A stretch of DNA of 63,882 nucleotides, counting the filler, from Octopus bimaculoides (taxonomy: Eukaryota): assembly GCF_001194135.2 (NCBI RefSeq). It is 6 parts of 5 records of this genome, joined end to end, with 100 filler letters (N's around TTAATTAATTAA, not from the genome) between each part and the next. Parts side by side here need not be neighbours in the genome. Positions count along the whole stretch, not along the records: positions 39,675 to 59,806 come from NC_068986.1; 5 more parts are not named here. One strand, written 5' to 3'. The notes under the pieces were generated by a model. The model was not told the DNA's origin, made no database searches, and saw only the letters and a program-made list of their open reading frames with translations. Both the position numbers and the translations under genes were made by a program. Positions 50,696-56,381 of the stretch are shown piece after piece (position 1 is the stretch's first letter; each line of letters starts with the position of its first letter).

Positions 50696-51720
50696 TTATT
50701 GATGCCTATTATAAATACTACTGCTCATTCTCAGTTTGGAAACTGATTTATATATACCCTGCAGACATGGTACTGCTGCTTCTGGTCTATTACCATAGTC
50801 ACATATCGACACAAAGAATGGATTTTTCCAATATGTCTTCAAAACGAAACTAAAATATTTGGATGCATGAACTCGATGGTTTTGACAATTGTGTTTGATG
50901 CCTACCATTTCTGTCAATACACCATTCCAAACATCATCCGGCATGAGCATTTTGTTCTTCAATGATGCCAGATAAAGTTTGTTGATTACATTAATATGTG
51001 CTATGTAACCAACACCATGACAATATATAGGATAGTTCTTCCCTTGATACAACATTTCCTCACCGAGATCACGGAATTTTTTGAGTTTGTTATGCATTGA
51101 TTTTTTTCCACCAAGACAATAACAAAATGCAAAATTATTATTATAATCAGTTTGAGATAAATGATTATGAAGAAATGGCACAAGTTTGAACTGGTGAACA
51201 AAAAGTTCATCATTTAATATCATAACATATTCCACATTGGCACAAAACTCCAAACTCCACTTCCATGCCATAAGTGTCTTTAAGTAGACATTACCATAAG
51301 ATTCAGGGAAATCATCCTGGATAATGTCTCTGTATATTTTACTCTCCTCACGAATGAGCGATTCGATTGTAGAGTTATTTGTTTTGGCAAAAAGAAAAAC
51401 ATGTTTGACAATAATGTCTTTTGAGAAAGAATCATATGGAATATTCTGGAAAATTTCTCTAAGTACTTTTCGTCGATCCAAATGGCTGTAAATTGTACGA
51501 ACAATTTAAAGAAGAAATACTTTTTCATATTGACTGCAAAGAACTGGTTCATTGATGAGATTTTTAAAGTTATATACATATGGCTGCGGGTTTTCATAGT
51601 AATGTTTATTGACTTTCGATCCTTTCGGTTGTGATCTAAGAATGATCTCCGTATTTTTTAAGGCTTCTCTTCTTTCATTAAAATAAGTCAAAGAATGATC
51701 ATTTGGTGAATGAAAAGCAT
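50696..51720 (-). pseudogene. Stem plus catalytic exon of a GT31 (beta-1,3-galactosyltransferase/Brainiac-like) gene, with one in-frame TAA at 51506-51508
   Basis: The track ORFs 51506-51787 and 50696-51481 are in the same frame, separated only by TAA plus 8 codons (VFLL*IVRTIYSHLDRRKVLRE). GT31 motifs: NLINEPVLC, ESKIYRDIIQDDFPESYGNVYLKT, YPIYCHGVGY, DDV. Acceptor TACTTTACTTTTGCTTTCCAG|AT at 51721. Confidence 0.82.
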
Positions 51721-51793
51721 CTGGAAAGCAAAAGTAAAGTATATACATTAAGAATTGTTGAAAATTTCGTCTAGCAACATGACTCACAAAACA

Positions 51794-52800
51794 ATTTCAA
51801 ATTCAAAGCTTGTAATGTTTCACTAGTATTCAGTTGTAGCAAACTTTACCTCTTTAGTAAGAAGGCTCAGGCAACACTTAGATTTGGTGATATGCCCAGA
51901 ATAGCAACAAAACAGTTTGCAGAAATATCACCTCATATTATATAATCTTGTATCCTGTTCTTGTTATTCCCTAGTATTGATGGGTTATAAAAGAGAAAGC
52001 ATGCCAGAATCAGTGCAGAGGTTTGAGAAGATTTCAGAGAAGGTTGATGAAAATAGGATTTCTGGTCATTGTTCGACCAGTGTTTAAAAGAGTTACTTCA
52101 TTTTCAATGCACTTCTCTATGCATGAACCTTGAACACATTATCCTCACCAATAGATAAATAGCCAGCCAATCCTTAGTCATAAACACATCACAAATAATA
52201 ACAGATTATATTTCCCGGCTCTCATGCAAAGCCAAGCTTTTCTGTGATTAATGTACCAAGAAACAACTTTGCTTCTAGTCCGCCACAATTCACTATTGGC
52301 AAGCCACTACATAATTATATAAATATTGTTATACACTTATGTAAAAATATAGATAACGTTGGAGTTGATTTTATTGTGGGACAGTATGCAGTCTTAATAT
52401 CATTCCAATATATCAAGTTCTATTCGACCAATTCACATGGTATTTTGATAATTGCTCACTCAAAGTTGTAAATAAACAAATAACTAACTAAATAAATAAA
52501 TGTTGGATTTAACTTTCAATGAACTTCAATTATCCATTGTTATAGCTAAGAAAGAAACTCACCATTAAATATCCAGTATAGAAACAGCATGGTACAGAAC
52601 ATGATTGAGGCGTATATTTTAAGGTACATTTCTGTCAAAGAATAAAAGAGAAAAAAATTCTTAACACAAAGTAGAAATTTGGAAGATAATGGAGAATTTA
52701 AAGTTGCTGTTTGTCTGACACATCTCCTTTTATGAGTTTATTCCTATCTAAAAAGGAAACGCTGTTCAATGGGCCCACATTGCATGGGCTTATCGAAGAG
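51794..52800. repeat. Segmental duplication copy A (intron, anchor exon and upstream flank)
   Basis: Colinear with 53592-54109, 55489-55565 and 56075-56570. Confidence 0.9.
52563..52631 (-). CDS. 69-nt exon A encoding a type II signal anchor, MYLKIYASIMFCTMLFLYWIFN (ATG at 52629)
   Basis: Acceptor TTTTTTTCTCTTTTATTCTTTGACAG and donor G|GTGAGT; the phase-1 join G+AT gives GAT (Asp), in frame with the exon at 51720. Confidence 0.8.
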
Positions 52801-52941
52801 CTTTTTCGTTTTTATATAAGTACAGTATATTTTCTTTTTAAACTAGACTACTCATATCAACAAAAATGCCAATGGTTTTATTAATGATAGAAGATGGTAC
52901 ACAATGAAAAAAACCATTGGTAAATGTTAGCAATATAGTAT

Positions 52942-53000
<59 letters not shown>

Positions 53001-53002
53001 GA

Positions 53003-53491: not shown

Positions 53492-54109
53492 NNNNNNNNN
53501 NNNNNNNNNNNNNNNNNNNNNNNNNNNNNNNNNNNNNNNNNNNNNNNNNNNNNNNNNNNNNNNNNNNNNNNNNNNNNNNNNNNNNNNNNNNATTTCAAAT
53601 TCAAAGCTTGTAATGTTTCACTAGTATTCAGTTGTAGCAAAGCCTAAAATCGAAACCTTACCTTTCTAGTAAGATATGCCCTGAATACCAACCAATCAGC
53701 TTGCAGAAATATCACCCATATTATATAATCTTGTATCCCATTCTTGTTGTTACCGAGTGTAGAGGAATTATAAAAGAGAAAGCATGCCAGAATCAGTGCA
53801 GAAGTTCGAGAAGATTTATGAAGATAGGATTTTTTGTCACTGTTCGACCTGTGTTTAAAACAATTACTTTGTTTTCAACGCACTTTTCTAAGCATATACC
53901 ATGAACACAATATCCTCACTTCTCACCACACAAATAAGTGGCCAGCCAATTCTTAGGAATAAATACATCAGATGCACATCGAATGCTCAAACAGATCAGT
54001 TTCATTGATTGTAGCCCAATCCTTGGTTAAACGAATCGTTAGCTATGATTAAACAGAGTATTTTTCCTGACATCCATGTGAAGCCAATCTTTTCTTTTTT
54101 TCATGTACA

Positions 54110-55488
54110 TCAATATATATAAAAGAGAAGATGTGTGTGTGTACGTGAATGTAGTTTATACGCGTCCACAAATTAGCACGCATGTCGCTCCAATTTTAGG
54201 AGGACATTGTTCATGACCCTACTTGCGTTTTTGTCAACTTTTTCTCTCAGAGGCACCTGCGTATAGCTGTAAAAATCGATAAACTTTTACCAATTTTGAA
54301 GTTTGTTGACATGGCGAAGTCAAATCTGTGCGTACGCGCGTGAAGGAGAGAGAGAAAGAAAGAAATAGTGTGTTTGTGACGGGGAGATACAAAGTGTTAG
54401 GTAGCGTCTAGCAAAAAAAAAAAAAAATGAAAAAGTAGGTAAGGCAGACAGAAATCAAAGCAAATTTTTCTAAGCAAGACAGAGTTTATTTTGCTAGCNN
54501 NNNNNNNNNNNNNNNNNNNNNNNNNNNNNNNNNNNNNNNNNNNNNNNNNNNNNNNNNNNNNNNNNNNNNNNNNNNNNNNNNNNNNNNNNNNNNNNNNNNN
54601 NNNNNNNNNNNNNNNNNNNNNNNNNNNNNNNNNNNNNNNNNNNNNNNNNNNNNNNNNNNNNNNNNNNNNNNNNNNNNNNNNNNNNNNNNNNNNNNNNNNN
54701 NNNNNNNNNNNNNNNNNNNNNNNNNNNNNNNNNNNNNNNNNNNNNNNNNNNNNNNNNNNNNNNNNNNNNNNNTGAAAGACGCTATATTCTATAATGAGAT
54801 TATATATACTTTCTCACACAACAATTCAAATATATTTATTTTAAATCATTTATTTGTTTTAAATTGTTCATCTTTCTCCCACCTCTCACTCTCACACACA
54901 TGCACATATACTACTTTGGGAGCGAAAGAGTTTTGTTTATATTTCACAACAACTATGAAACAAAAATGTAACAATTTGTCAACCCCCCGCACCCGTTTTT
55001 CAGACCACAGATTAACACCCGCACGATTTCCACTAGGGTGTTACGGTTAGGGTTTTAGGGTTAGGATTAGGGTTAGGGTTAAGGTTAGTGTTAGGGTTAG
55101 GGTTGGTGTTAGGGTTAGGGTTAGGGTTTAGGGTTAGAGTTAACCTAGAAGCGACAGGCCCCTTATTTTTTCGTTAAGGCTGTTGGTAAGTTTTCCTAAG
55201 TTACTCCAATTCACATCCCCAATGCAAACCTTCAGATCAACCTTTTCCTATGCAGATCTCTAATGCAACTTAAAAAAAAAAAAACAGTCAATGAGTGGAA
55301 ATAACCAATAAACTGATTCCTTATGGGATTTCCCAATCAAATTGCCAGCAAACCATTTTCAGCCAAACCAATTTCAACAGATTTCGCTCAAATCTGATGT
55401 CCATGTTACTTATTTTGGTTTGAAATAAAGTACTTGATCACTTAATAATCCTAGCTTAATCCCGAGCAGCGCCGGGCTATACTGCTAG
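54110..55488 (+). mobile_element. Non-autonomous Helitron
   Basis: Starts A|TC, ends CCCGAGCAGCGCCGGG hairpin...CTAG|T; no TSD; the rejoined flanks align to the uninterrupted copy A at ~52250-52310. Confidence 0.85.
55033..55142 (+). repeat. Degenerate interstitial (TTAGGG)n array
   Basis: Direct reading; perfect and variant TTAGGG hexamers over ~110 bp. Confidence 0.9.
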
Positions 55489-55565
55489 TAAGAACTATAT
55501 TTGCACACCACAATATACTACTGGCATGCCACTACATAATTATGTAAATATTGTGATATACTTCT

Positions 55566-56074
55566 TGCGAAGACTTATTGGGGCAAGCGAAAGTGAAATC
55601 AGTATAGCACCTGTGCCCAGCATTGCCTTTCTAGCATTTGTGCCCGTGACATGTGTAAGGATTTTCGAGCGAGATTGTTGCCAGTGCCCCCCCCCAGACT
55701 GGCTCTTGCGTGTGGCACGTAAAATACACCATTTTGAGCGTGGCCATCGCCAGTACCGCCTGACTGGCCTTTGTAGGATTTTCGAGCGAGATCGTTGCCA
55801 GTGCCCCTGGACTGGCTCTTGTGTGGGTGGCACGTAAAATACACCATTTTGAGCGTGGCCGTTGCCAGTACCGCCTGACTGGCCTTCGTGCGGGTGACAC
55901 GTAAAAGCACCCACTACACTCTCGGAGTGGTTGGCGTTAGGAAGGGCATCCAGCTGTAGAAACTCTGCCAAATCAGATTGGAGCCTGGTGTTGCCATCCG
56001 GTTTCACCAGTCCTCAGTCAAATCGTCCAACCCATGCTAGCATGGAAAGCGGACGTTAAACAATGATGATGATG
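55566..56074 (+). mobile_element. 5'-truncated RTE 3' UTR insertion with (GAT)n tail and a 6-bp TSD
   Basis: ACTTCT at 55560-55565 and 56075-56080; internal ~118-bp tandem duplication; absent from copy A. Confidence 0.85.
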
Positions 56075-56312
56075 ACTTCTGTAAAAAATAAGTATTATTT
56101 GAACAACGTTGGAATTGGTTTTATTATGAGACAGCATGCTGTCTTAACATCATTGCAGTGTATCAAAACCCATTCAACCAATCTACACAATGTTTTGATA
56201 ATTGCTCATCCAGAGTTGTAAATAAACAAATAACTAGCTAAATAAATAAATGCTGAATTTAACATTCAAGAAATTTCAATTATCCATTGTTGTAGCTAAG
56301 AAAGTAACTTAC

Positions 56313-56381
56313 CATGAAATATCCAGTATACATACAGCAAGATACAAATTGCAATTAAGGTTTTTATTTTAAGGTACATCT
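56313..56381 (-). CDS. 69-nt exon B encoding a paralogous signal anchor, MYLKIKTLIAICILLYVYWIFH (ATG at 56379)
   Basis: Acceptor ATTTTGCTTTATTTTATATTTTTTGACAG and consensus donor G|GTAAGT; same length and phase as exon A; no indels or stops. Confidence 0.72.

What the first reader, a model, noticed from the sequence alone, without database searches (positions are those of the whole stretch)
50696..56381. Two paralogous 69-nt membrane-anchor exons upstream of one visible GT31 catalytic exon
Seen in sequence: exons A (52563-52631) and B (56313-56381) are both exactly 69 nt. Each has a pyrimidine tract plus GACAG acceptor, 2 nt of UTR, an ATG, 22 codons of a hydrophobic type II anchor (MYLKIYASIMFCTMLFLYWIFN versus MYLKIKTLIAICILLYVYWIFH) and a phase-1 GTRAGT donor. 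Either exon splices in frame to the exon at 51720. Because 69 is a multiple of 3, B+A together would also stay in frame. Frame, splice sites and hydrophobicity are kept despite many substitutions, while intron B has taken two transposon insertions. This suggests selection on both exons. No second catalytic exon is visible: intron B homology stops at an unsized 100-N gap (53492-53591), about 73 nt before the expected acceptor. Established: the cytoplasmic tail/TM/stem of Golgi glycosyltransferases influences their localisation. Inference: either (a) a tandem paralog is hidden in the gap, or (b) these are alternative anchor cassettes on a shared catalytic exon, swapping the targeting signal rather than the catalytic domain. 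Both exons are missing from the ORF track.
Basis: partly seen in the sequence, partly recalled or inferred. Interest (0 to 1): 0.85.

Follow-up and report, generated by a model that had tools for sequence, protein, structure and literature searches.

The report
Two glycosyltransferase paralogs tangled by assembly
The two 69-nt membrane-anchor exons are real, but they are the first coding exons of two old, separate octopus GT31 genes whose pieces a gappy short-read assembly probably interleaved; the one visible catalytic exon has a premature stop, and nothing supports swappable anchor cassettes.

Summary
The sequence facts hold. There are two 69-nt exons on the minus strand (A 52563-52631, B 56313-56381), each with an acceptor, an ATG, 22 hydrophobic codons and a phase-1 donor, and only one GT31 catalytic exon (50696-51720).

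The window is octopus, almost certainly O. bimaculoides. In gap-free O. sinensis and O. vulgaris, every anchor exon has its own catalytic exon about 860 nt downstream. Exon B and its intron are orthologous to the "X2/P8" gene. Exon A and its intron are orthologous to the "X1" gene. The visible catalytic exon is X2/P8-type, so by descent it belongs to B.

The type switch falls at a 50-nt run of exact A/B identity (51794-51843), which is also the last 50 nt of the B contig before the 100-N gap. The real X1 locus of O. bimaculoides (XP_014785216.2, "partial") has a 1.5-kb gap where the window's A segment fits, with exact 91-nt and 165-nt overlaps at the contig ends.

The most likely reading is a chimeric contig or mis-join between paralogs, giving two ordinary genes. 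A real rearranged copy is not excluded. The cassette model is unsupported. Interest is low.

The parts
56382..57320 (-). 5' flank of exon B, X2/P8-type
   Evidence: 56056-57320 aligns to O. sinensis L002 9072-10320 at 91.5%, L003 9062-10320 at 92.5% and O. vulgaris L005 at 91.9%.
56313..56381 (-). Exon B: first coding exon (2 nt + ATG + 22 codons, phase-1 donor) of the X2/P8-type GT31 gene
   Evidence: 20/22 aa identical to the N-terminus of O. sinensis XP_036359632 (MYLKKKTLITICILLYVYWIFH). dN/dS vs X2 is 0.13.
53592..56312 (-). Intron B, as far as it is assembled. Layout: X2-type intron 56075-56312; SINE-like insertion 55566-56074 with AGAAGT duplication; X2-type island 55489-55565; second insertion 54111-55488, which contains the (TTAGGG)n-like tract 55040-55142 and the gap 54499-54772; X2-type intron 53592-54110.
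   Evidence: In aligned columns B is 0.91-0.97 identical to X2/P8 and 0.65-0.85 to X1.
53592..53641 (-). R1, B copy: the last 50 nt of the B contig, identical to 51794-51843
   Evidence: Exact identity, and the longest exact A/B run in the whole alignment.
53492..53591 (.). 100-N gap. It joins sequence from two different ancestral loci, so continuity is not supported.
   Evidence: One side is X2-type intron. The other is the middle of the Tc1 element that lies upstream of X1. The assembly paper states that gaps were not closed and that scaffolding was by HiRise.
53020..53491 (-). 3' half of a decayed Tc1/mariner element (DDE_3), orthologous to the element upstream of O. sinensis X1
   Evidence: Pfam DDE_3 E=1.6e-6. 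53401-53491 is 100% identical to L001 8361-8451. O. sinensis carries the same element with an internal deletion.
52943..52994 (.). (CA/TG)26 microsatellite, also present upstream of O. sinensis X1
52632..52964 (-). 5' flank of exon A, X1-type
   Evidence: 52717-52964 aligns to L004 9227-9475 at 90%.
52563..52631 (-). Exon A: first coding exon of the X1-type GT31 gene
   Evidence: It is embedded in X1-type flank and intron, with 104 X1-like against 29 X2-like informative sites over 51844-52672. The peptide itself has diverged from sinX1 (dN/dS about 1.5, one codon indel).
51844..52562 (-). Intron A, X1-type
   Evidence: 0.89-0.95 identity to sinX1 against 0.75-0.87 to sinX2.
51794..51843 (-). 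R1, A copy: the 50-nt exact repeat where the sequence type switches from X1 to X2/P8
   Evidence: The best single breakpoint lies between 51864 and 51837. Fisher p=2e-27 for the switch.
50696..51720 (-). GT31 catalytic exon, X2/P8-type, so it is the partner of exon B by descent. It is disrupted by a stop codon.
   Evidence: Pfam PF01762 E=4.9e-29. 84% aa identity to sinX2 against 71% to sinX1. Informative sites are 7:22 (5' third) and 6:73 (3' part) in favour of X2.
51506..51508 (-). In-frame TAA (codon 94); the ancestral codon is TAY (Tyr)
   Evidence: sinX2/P8 have TAT and sinX1 has TAC at this position.
51221..51385 (-). R2: 165 nt identical to the start of the O. bimaculoides X1-type catalytic contig (L001 9995-10159)
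   Evidence: The first mismatch is at 51220. After that L001 is X1-type and the window is X2-type.
51206..51214 (-). Codons N-D-E at the position of the GT31 DxD (DDD) motif
   Evidence: Aligned to DDD of human B3GNT2 (7JHK/6WMM). The same NDE is found in all octopus relatives.
50262..50695 (-). 3' flank, orthologous to the flank of the P8 copy
   Evidence: 50262-52191 aligns to L003 12376-10530. Identity is 0.92-0.96 to P8 in the flank. O. vulgaris L005 matches at 90.8%.
58060..59455 (-). Blocks colinear with the far-upstream region of O. sinensis X1. They end abruptly at 58060, running into a Tigger-like ORF fragment (57653-58066).
   Evidence: The 127-nt overlap with L001 is only 95% identical, so this piece exists twice in the assembly.

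Best explanation
Exons A and B are the first coding exons (cytoplasmic tail plus signal-anchor) of two distinct, old paralogous GT31 'beta-1,3-galactosyltransferase 1-like' genes of octopus. Each normally consists of a 69-72-nt anchor exon, an intron of about 0.86 kb, and one catalytic exon of about 1 kb.

- B, its intron and the visible catalytic exon with its 3' flank together form the O. bimaculoides ortholog of the O. sinensis X2/P8 gene.
- A, its flank and its intron are the missing 5' part of the ortholog of the O. sinensis X1 gene. The rest of that gene (XP_014785216.2, 'partial') lies on another scaffold, behind a 1.5-kb gap.

The arrangement 'B ... gap ... A ... one catalytic exon' is most likely an assembly product. 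The short-read assembler met stretches that are identical in the two paralogs: R1 at 51794-51843, R2 at 51221-51385, and possibly the whole stretch between them. It joined intron A to the X2-type exon and left the B contig dangling at R1. The scaffolder then placed B upstream across an unsized gap.

As assembled, neither splice product encodes an enzyme, because a TAY-to-TAA change truncates the protein at codon 94.

Shown here: the orthology of each segment, the position of the switch, the contig-end overlaps, and the stop codon. Inferred: that the join is artefactual rather than a real rearranged copy.
For: 1. **One anchor, one catalytic exon in relatives.** This holds in three complete O. 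sinensis units (L002, L003, L004) and in O. vulgaris (L005), all without gaps. The annotated proteins XP_036359632 (B-type anchor plus X2 catalytic) and XP_029638388 (X1 anchor plus X1 catalytic) show the same pairing.
2. **Sliding identity.** B is 0.91-0.97 identical to X2/P8. The A flank, exon and intron are 0.86-0.95 identical to X1. The catalytic exon is 0.89-0.95 identical to X2/P8 but only 0.64-0.91 to X1. Informative sites are 104:29 (X1:X2) to the left of R1 and 14:102 to the right, p=2e-27.
3. **Position of the switch.** It sits at the only 50-nt exact A/B run, which is also the terminal 50 nt of the B contig.
4. **L001 is the X1 locus.** O. bimaculoides L001 is colinear with the O. 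sinensis X1 locus on both flanks for about 13 kb. It lacks only L004 9086-11220, the interval to which the window's A segment maps.
5. **Exact overlaps at contig ends.** The end of L001's left contig overlaps the window contig's start by 91 nt at 100%. L001's right contig starts with 165 nt at 100% identity to the window and then diverges to 60-80%. The expected fill is 2015 nt, against a 1543-N estimated gap.
6. **The Tc1 halves belong together.** The Tc1 half in L001 and the Tc1 half in the window are contiguous in O. sinensis, where one element with an internal deletion lies directly upstream of X1.
Against: - The join between intron A and the X2-type exon lies inside uninterrupted sequence, with no N from 53491 down to 49361. 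So the error would have to be at contig or gap-closure level, and I could not inspect reads.
- Real non-allelic recombination would also place a switch at an identical stretch.
- A 127-nt piece of the X1 upstream region is present in both the window (58060-58186) and L001 (5345-5471) at only 95% identity, with derived changes in each copy. The window's copy runs without N into a Tigger-like fragment and on to exon B. So at least part of this region really exists twice in the assembled genome, and a true rearranged duplicate locus cannot be excluded.
- That the window comes from O. bimaculoides is inferred from exact matches, not from a label.
Confidence: 0.68

Rival explanations
1. The tandem arrangement is real and a catalytic exon is hidden. 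In O. bimaculoides a B-type gene lies directly upstream of an A-type gene. B's own catalytic exon, its 3' flank and the 5' half of the Tc1 element are inside the unsized gap. A's catalytic exon was converted to X2-type by gene conversion or unequal crossing-over with B.
For: - Intron-B homology runs up to the gap edge.
- The Tc1 element is cut mid-element by the gap, so more than 100 nt must be missing.
- A collapsed pair of near-identical catalytic exons would also end the B contig at R1.
- There is evidence that part of the X1 upstream region is duplicated, at 95% identity.
- Paralogs in this family do exchange sequence: R2 is 165 nt identical between the X1- and X2-type exons, and sinX1 vs sinX2 reaches 0.95 in mid-exon.
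Against: - The A segment would have to exist twice, yet the assembly holds it once, and the true X1 locus has a hole of matching size with exact end overlaps.
- At the 5% divergence seen in the duplicated 127-nt piece, exact overlaps of 91 and 165 nt would be very unlikely.
- The gene order (X2-type upstream of X1-type) is the reverse of that in O. sinensis.
Confidence: 0.2
2. These are real alternative anchor cassettes. The scaffold is correct, there is only one catalytic exon, and transcripts use either B or A as the first coding exon, which swaps the Golgi-targeting tail and transmembrane segment.
For: - Both exons keep their ATG, frame, splice sites and hydrophobicity.
- A simulation gives about 0.16 for keeping the ATG and an open frame after 15 random substitutions.
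- Both exons splice in phase to 51720.
- NCBI groups O. sinensis X1 and X2 as isoforms of one gene. This hints at a shared 5' non-coding exon and some choice between downstream units.
Against: - No relative has two anchors per catalytic exon.
- Conservation of each exon is explained by its own gene.
- A vs B dN/dS is about 1, and exon identity equals intron identity.
- The catalytic exon has a premature TAA.
- The arrangement coincides with contig ends at exact repeats.
Confidence: 0.06
3. The locus is real but dead. A rearranged duplicate has decayed, leaving a stray B 5' half, an A/X2 hybrid gene made by unequal crossing-over, and a nonsense mutation. None of it is expressed as protein.
For: - TAA at codon 94.
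- The window branch has 27 aa changes against 14 on the sinX2 branch (p=0.06). dN/dS is 0.56, against 0.35 for the X1 ortholog pair.
- X2/P8-type copies look dispensable elsewhere. sinX2 vs sinP8 gives dN/dS of about 1.05, and the O. vulgaris P8 copy has a 1.2-kb insertion in its catalytic exon.
- No O. bimaculoides protein model exists for this exon.
Against: - There is only one disabling change and no frameshift in 1 kb, so any decay is recent.
- The same assembly-coincidence arguments apply as against the other 'real arrangement' models.
Confidence: 0.06

Closest known systems
Octopus sinensis beta-1,3-galactosyltransferase 1-like isoform X2 (XP_036359632.1/XP_036359633.1; locus L002) and its near-identical copy XP_036359375.1 (L003)
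   Same: - The coding structure is the same two exons.
- The B-type anchor is 20/22 aa identical.
- The catalytic exon is 84% aa and about 92% nt identical.
- Flank and intron are 91-97% identical.
- The length is the same (363 aa), and NDE replaces DDD in both.
   Different: - The window copy has TAA where these have Tyr.
- In the scaffold the window copy is separated from its anchor by a gap plus 1.65 kb of X1-type sequence.
- Intron B carries two extra insertions.
Octopus sinensis isoform X1 (XP_029638388.1; L004) and O. bimaculoides XP_014785216.2 'partial' (L001)
   Same: - The flank, exon and intron of A are orthologous to the X1 unit (86-95%).
- The same Tc1 element and (TG)n tract lie upstream.
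- L001 lacks this 5' part.
   Different: - The exon A peptide has diverged strongly from the sinX1 anchor (about 12/22 identical, one codon shorter).
- In the window, A is followed by an X2-type catalytic exon, not an X1-type one.
Variable-first-exon loci such as UGT1A and the clustered protocadherins
   Same: On the face of the scaffold, several alternative 5' coding exons precede one shared downstream exon, all in compatible phase.
   Different: - In those loci each variable exon has its own promoter, the shared exons are single-copy in all relatives, and usage is shown by transcripts.
- Here each 'variable' exon has its own 'constant' exon in sister species.
- Each anchor exon has an acceptor, so it is not a first exon.
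- The arrangement is probably not real.
Paralog-collapse or chimeric-contig artefacts of short-read assemblies (general knowledge)
   Same: - Contigs end at exact repeats shared by paralogs.
- One scaffold lacks the piece that another scaffold holds.
- Contig ends show exact overlaps.
   Different: This is not proven at read level here. One duplicated 127-nt piece at 95% identity hints at some real duplication.

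Membership tests
GT31 glycosyltransferase (Pfam PF01762 Galactosyl_T; B3GALT/B3GNT-like) | Galactosyl_T catalytic domain recognisable by profile | tested here: met
   PF01762 E=4.9e-29, 102 bits against a cut-off of 23, aa 105-300. Matches to solved B3GNT2 and B3GALT5 structures have E of 2e-15 to 2e-14.
GT31 glycosyltransferase (Pfam PF01762 Galactosyl_T; B3GALT/B3GNT-like) | Type II topology: short cytoplasmic tail plus one N-terminal hydrophobic signal-anchor | tested here: met
   Both exons encode MYLKI/K followed by about 17 hydrophobic residues (mean Kyte-Doolittle 1.45 and 1.73). Topology itself was not tested.
GT31 glycosyltransferase (Pfam PF01762 Galactosyl_T; B3GALT/B3GNT-like) | Canonical DxD (DDD) metal/nucleotide-sugar motif | tested here: not met
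   N-D-E aligns to D-D-D of B3GNT2. The same NDE is present in all 10 octopus relatives. The later DDV motif is kept. Activity and donor are therefore uncertain.
GT31 glycosyltransferase (Pfam PF01762 Galactosyl_T; B3GALT/B3GNT-like) | Intact reading frame (functional member rather than pseudogene) | tested here: not met
   TAA at 51506-51508, codon 94, upstream of the whole domain. Whether it is a true allele or an error cannot be tested without reads.
Alternative first-coding-exon (anchor cassette) gene | Several alternative 5' coding exons physically upstream of a single shared downstream exon in the real genome | tested here: inconclusive
   It is present in the scaffold, but the junctions coincide with contig ends at exact repeats, and the A segment fits a hole in another locus. 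Reads were not available.
Alternative first-coding-exon (anchor cassette) gene | The same architecture in related genomes (variable exons without constant exons of their own) | tested here: not met
   O. sinensis X1, X2 and P8 and the O. vulgaris P8 ortholog each have one anchor and one catalytic exon.
Alternative first-coding-exon (anchor cassette) gene | Transcripts joining each variable exon to the shared exon | not testable with these tools
   No RNA-seq access. No protein in the 5.8-billion-sequence collection carries the exon A peptide.
Alternative first-coding-exon (anchor cassette) gene | Purifying selection on each variable exon beyond that on its surroundings | tested here: not met
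   A/B exon identity is 77% against 77-78% for the intron. dN/dS is 1.05 for A/B, 0.13 for B vs X2, and about 1.5 for A vs X1, all on very few sites.

The most novel reading that the evidence does not exclude
The scaffold is correct. An unequal crossing-over in O. bimaculoides placed an X1-type anchor exon between the X2-type anchor exon and the X2-type catalytic exon. This would create a young gene with two alternative signal-anchor exons on one catalytic exon, so that the Golgi-targeting part of a GT31 enzyme is swapped by splicing. It might use a 5' non-coding exon shared across the cluster, as NCBI's 'isoform X1/X2' grouping in O. sinensis hints.
Probability: 0.06. Interest if true: 0.45.

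Novelty: not a real feature. Interest (0 to 1): 0.1.

Why it matters
The main value is as a caution. In the O. bimaculoides assembly, which consists of short-read contigs re-scaffolded with Hi-C, clusters of young paralogs can be interleaved. Apparent exon-sharing architectures there need read-level proof. The analysis also supplies the likely missing 5' end (exon A and its intron) for the 'partial' gene model XP_014785216.2. It flags the X2-type copy as a probable recent pseudogene. If the arrangement were real, it would be a small, young example of anchor swapping in a glycosyltransferase, but the stop codon would still make it non-functional as sequenced.

Tried and rejected
1. **Placing the window in the public assembly through the neighbouring C2H2 zinc-finger ORF (42110-43627).** The exact look-up found nothing. 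The homology search returned only generic zinc-finger proteins and no octopus match.
2. **Reading the 2015 genome paper for the assembler's k-mer size.** The paper is not held. Two literature searches gave only indirect hits. The 2022 paper and its supplement gave the relevant statement on reused contigs and unclosed gaps.
3. **Testing whether the Tc1 halves in L001 and in the window show terminal inverted repeats.** Neither contig contains the element's ends, so there was no result. The orthologous, internally deleted element in O. sinensis answered the question instead.
4. **The hypothesis that the O. sinensis X2 gene is a B/A hybrid made by deletion.** This was suggested by the raw BLAST identities. 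I rejected it after the multiple alignment showed that B is X2-type along its whole length; the low BLAST values came from indels.
5. **The idea that the far-upstream matches to the X1 region are dispersed repeats.** This is not supported. They are single-copy among all the loci and colinear.
6. **A-to-I editing of UAA to UGG as a rescue of the stop.** I considered this only as a thought. Both adenosines would have to be edited and the result would be Trp, not the ancestral Tyr. There is no evidence for it.

Full report
**What is in the sequence**

The gene lies on the minus strand. Exon A (52563-52631) and exon B (56313-56381) are each 69 nt and 53/69 identical. Each is preceded by a pyrimidine tract and TTTGACAG, begins with 2 nt and an ATG, and encodes 22 residues: MYLKIYASIMFCTMLFLYWIFN (A) and MYLKIKTLIAICILLYVYWIFH (B). 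Each ends with a phase-1 donor, G|GTGAGT or G|GTAAGT. Either exon joins in frame to the acceptor at 51720.

The downstream exon (50696-51720) is a GT31 domain: Pfam PF01762, E=4.9e-29, with matches to the solved B3GNT2 and B3GALT5 structures. It is the only such exon in the piece.

There is a TAA at 51506-51508, codon 94 of either spliced product, ahead of the whole catalytic domain. All relatives have Tyr there, TAT or TAC, so this is a single third-position change.

**The two gaps**

Gap 54499-54772 lies inside the second of two insertions in intron B.
- The first insertion is a SINE-like element at 55566-56074, flanked by an AGAAGT duplication.
- The second insertion is 54111-55488 and includes a (TTAGGG)n-like tract.
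- The intron sequence on either side of these insertions is colinear with the O. sinensis intron. The join is therefore plausible, and no reading frame is involved.

Gap 53492-53591 is different. One side is the intron of one gene, ending 73 nt before the expected acceptor. The other side is the middle of a Tc1 element that belongs upstream of another gene. No comparative evidence supports continuity across this gap.

**Who the relatives are**

The spliced product is 82% identical over its full 363 aa to Octopus sinensis 'beta-1,3-galactosyltransferase 1-like isoform X2', whose N-terminus is B-type. O. sinensis has three complete units on one chromosome:

| Unit | Locus | Position relative to the others |
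|---|---|---|
| X1 | L004 | reference |
| X2 | L002 | 17.6 kb downstream of X1, same strand |
| P8 | L003 | 95 kb away; a 3.1-kb copy 97% identical to X2 |

Each unit is one anchor exon, an intron of about 0.86 kb, and one catalytic exon. The O. vulgaris ortholog of P8 has the same layout, with a 1.2-kb insertion in its catalytic exon. No genome shows two anchors per catalytic exon.

**Orthology of each window segment**

A multiple alignment with sliding identity gives the following.

| Window segment | Identity to X2/P8 | Identity to X1 |
|---|---|---|
| B flank, exon B and all assembled intron B | 0.91-0.97 | 0.65-0.85 (a few 150-column windows fall lower on both sides) |
| A flank, exon A and intron A | 0.75-0.87 | 0.86-0.95 |
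| Catalytic exon | 0.89-0.95 | 0.64-0.91 |

The 3' flank (50262-50695) matches the P8 flank.

At sites where X1 and X2 differ, the A unit shows 104 X1-like against 29 X2-like sites over 51844-52672, but 14 against 102 from 51721 to 50696. Fisher p = 2e-27. By descent, then, the visible catalytic exon is the partner of exon B, and exon A is the anchor of the X1 gene.

**Where the switch is**

The best single breakpoint lies between 51864 and 51837. That is the location of the only 50-nt run of exact identity between the A and B units (51794-51843 = 53592-53641). Those same 50 nt are the last bases of the B contig before the 100-N gap.

**Where the rest of the X1 gene is**

The O. bimaculoides protein XP_014785216.2 ('partial') is X1-type. 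Its locus L001, on the chromosome-scale assembly, is colinear with the O. sinensis X1 locus on both sides for about 13 kb. It lacks only the interval L004 9086-11220, which is replaced by a Tc1 5' half and a 1543-N gap. The window's A segment maps to that interval (52964-52717 ~ L004 9227-9475, and 52731 down to about 51840 ~ L004 9897 to about 10790).

The contig ends fit together:
- The last 91 nt before L001's gap are 100% identical to the first 91 nt of the window contig (53491-53401).
- The first 165 nt after L001's gap are 100% identical to window 51385-51221. After that L001 is X1-type and the window is X2-type.
- O. sinensis carries the same Tc1 element upstream of X1, with an internal deletion that joins the part seen in L001 directly to the part seen in the window. 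The same (TG)n tract and the A-type flank follow it.
- The expected fill is 2015 nt, against the estimated 1543 N.
- The chromosome-scale assembly reused the published shotgun contigs. [quoted passage not shown]

**Best reading**

There are two ordinary two-coding-exon genes:
- B plus the visible catalytic exon, which is the X2/P8 ortholog and now carries a nonsense codon.
- A plus the X1-type exon of L001.

The assembler met stretches that are identical in the two paralogs: R1, R2, and possibly everything between them (51221-51843). The slightly mixed 7:22 signal in that interval would fit such a shared stretch. The assembler joined intron A to the X2-type exon and ended the B contig in R1. 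It left a hole at the true X1 locus, and scaffolding then put B upstream across an unsized gap. I put this reading at about 0.68.

**What speaks against it**

- The join is inside N-free sequence, and I could not look at reads.
- Real non-allelic recombination would also break at an identical stretch.
- The window's far-upstream blocks (59455-58060) are colinear with the far-upstream region of O. sinensis X1. They overlap L001's contig by 127 nt at only 95% identity, with derived changes in each copy. The window's copy then runs, without N, into the middle of a Tigger-like ORF and on to exon B.
- So some of this region does exist twice in the assembled genome.

**Selection**

- Exon identity equals intron identity (77% against 77-78%).
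- dN/dS is 1.05 for A vs B, 0.13 for B vs its ortholog X2, and about 1.5 for A vs X1. All of these rest on very few sites.
- Keeping the ATG and an open frame after 15 random substitutions has a probability of about 0.16. Together with the hydrophobicity this gives about 0.05. That mild signal is fully explained if each exon served its own gene.
- For the catalytic exon, dN/dS vs sinX2 is 0.56, against 0.35 for the X1 ortholog pair. There are 27 changes on the window branch against 14 on the sinX2 branch (p=0.06). This fits recently relaxed constraint.
- Inclusion of B and A together would give two adjacent hydrophobic segments. By inference this would invert the topology.

**Comparison with known systems and verdict**

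The locus belongs to a lineage-specific octopus clade of GT31 in which NDE replaces the DDD motif. It resembles variable-first-exon loci (UGT1A, clustered protocadherins; own knowledge) only on the face of the scaffold, and the defining features that I could test are not met. The proposed feature, two anchor cassettes sharing one catalytic exon, is most likely not real. The exons themselves are real and already annotated in sister species. Interest is low.

Noticed in passing
window 51206-51214 (minus); also P0001-P0010: Every member of this octopus GT31 clade has N-D-E where GT31 enzymes have the D-D-D (DxD) metal-binding motif, aligned here to human B3GNT2. The later DDV motif is kept. The clade is under moderate purifying selection (dN/dS 0.35-0.6), so the variant motif seems to be tolerated or functional.
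   Followed up: partly
L002 / L004 (O. sinensis CM016864.1, 24.976-24.998 Mb): NCBI lists X1 and X2 as isoforms of one gene, although they use entirely different coding exons 17.6 kb apart. All five anchor exons keep an acceptor (TTTGACAG) 2 nt before the ATG. This suggests a shared 5' non-coding exon spliced to either of two complete tandem units.
   Followed up: no
L005 11094-12330 (O. vulgaris OX597819.1): The O. vulgaris ortholog of the P8 copy has a 1.2-kb insertion inside its catalytic exon, and its annotated product is a 96-aa stub. In O. sinensis, X2 vs P8 gives dN/dS of about 1.05. The X2/P8-type copies therefore look dispensable in several species.
   Followed up: partly
L003 10001-12874: The NCBI model for O. 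sinensis P8 (388 aa) splices out of the catalytic exon to a different C-terminus, although the genomic reading frame continues to the same stop as in X2.
   Followed up: no
window 51221-51385 vs L001 9995-10159: The X1-type and X2-type catalytic exons of O. bimaculoides are identical over 165 nt, while the orthologs differ by 4-11% there. This is either a recent gene-conversion tract or a consensus artefact.
   Followed up: partly
window 58060-58186 vs L001 5345-5471; window 57653-58066: A piece of the X1 upstream region is present twice in the assembly, at 95% identity. The window copy breaks abruptly into the middle of a Tigger/pogo-like ORF (weak HTH_Tnp_Tc5 hit), with no element end or TA junction.
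   Followed up: partly
window 55566-56074, 49090-49780; also several copies in L001-L005: A SINE-like element of about 0.5 kb has internal 115-nt and 67-nt tandem subrepeats (55658-55906). A pair of copies around 49361-49593 forms an inverted repeat. The copy in intron B has a 6-nt AGAAGT target duplication.
   Followed up: partly
window 55040-55142: An interstitial telomere-like (TTAGGG)n tract of about 17 degenerate units lies inside the second intron-B insertion.
   Followed up: no
window 42110-43627 (+): An intact 505-aa C2H2 zinc-finger ORF with many tandem fingers lies convergent to the GT31 exon. Paralogous zinc-finger genes lie near the GT31 copies in O. sinensis, O. vulgaris and L001 (about 67% nt identity).
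   Followed up: partly
window 48249-49162 (+): ORF fragments that look like a decayed retroelement lie between the GT31 exon and the zinc-finger gene. The one fragment scanned had no Pfam hit. In O. sinensis an RVT_1 gene follows the P8 copy.
   Followed up: no
L004 8682-9226; L001 7682-8451; window 53020-53491: The Tc1/mariner element upstream of X1 predates the split between O. bimaculoides and O. sinensis. The O. sinensis copy has lost its middle by an internal deletion.
   Followed up: yes
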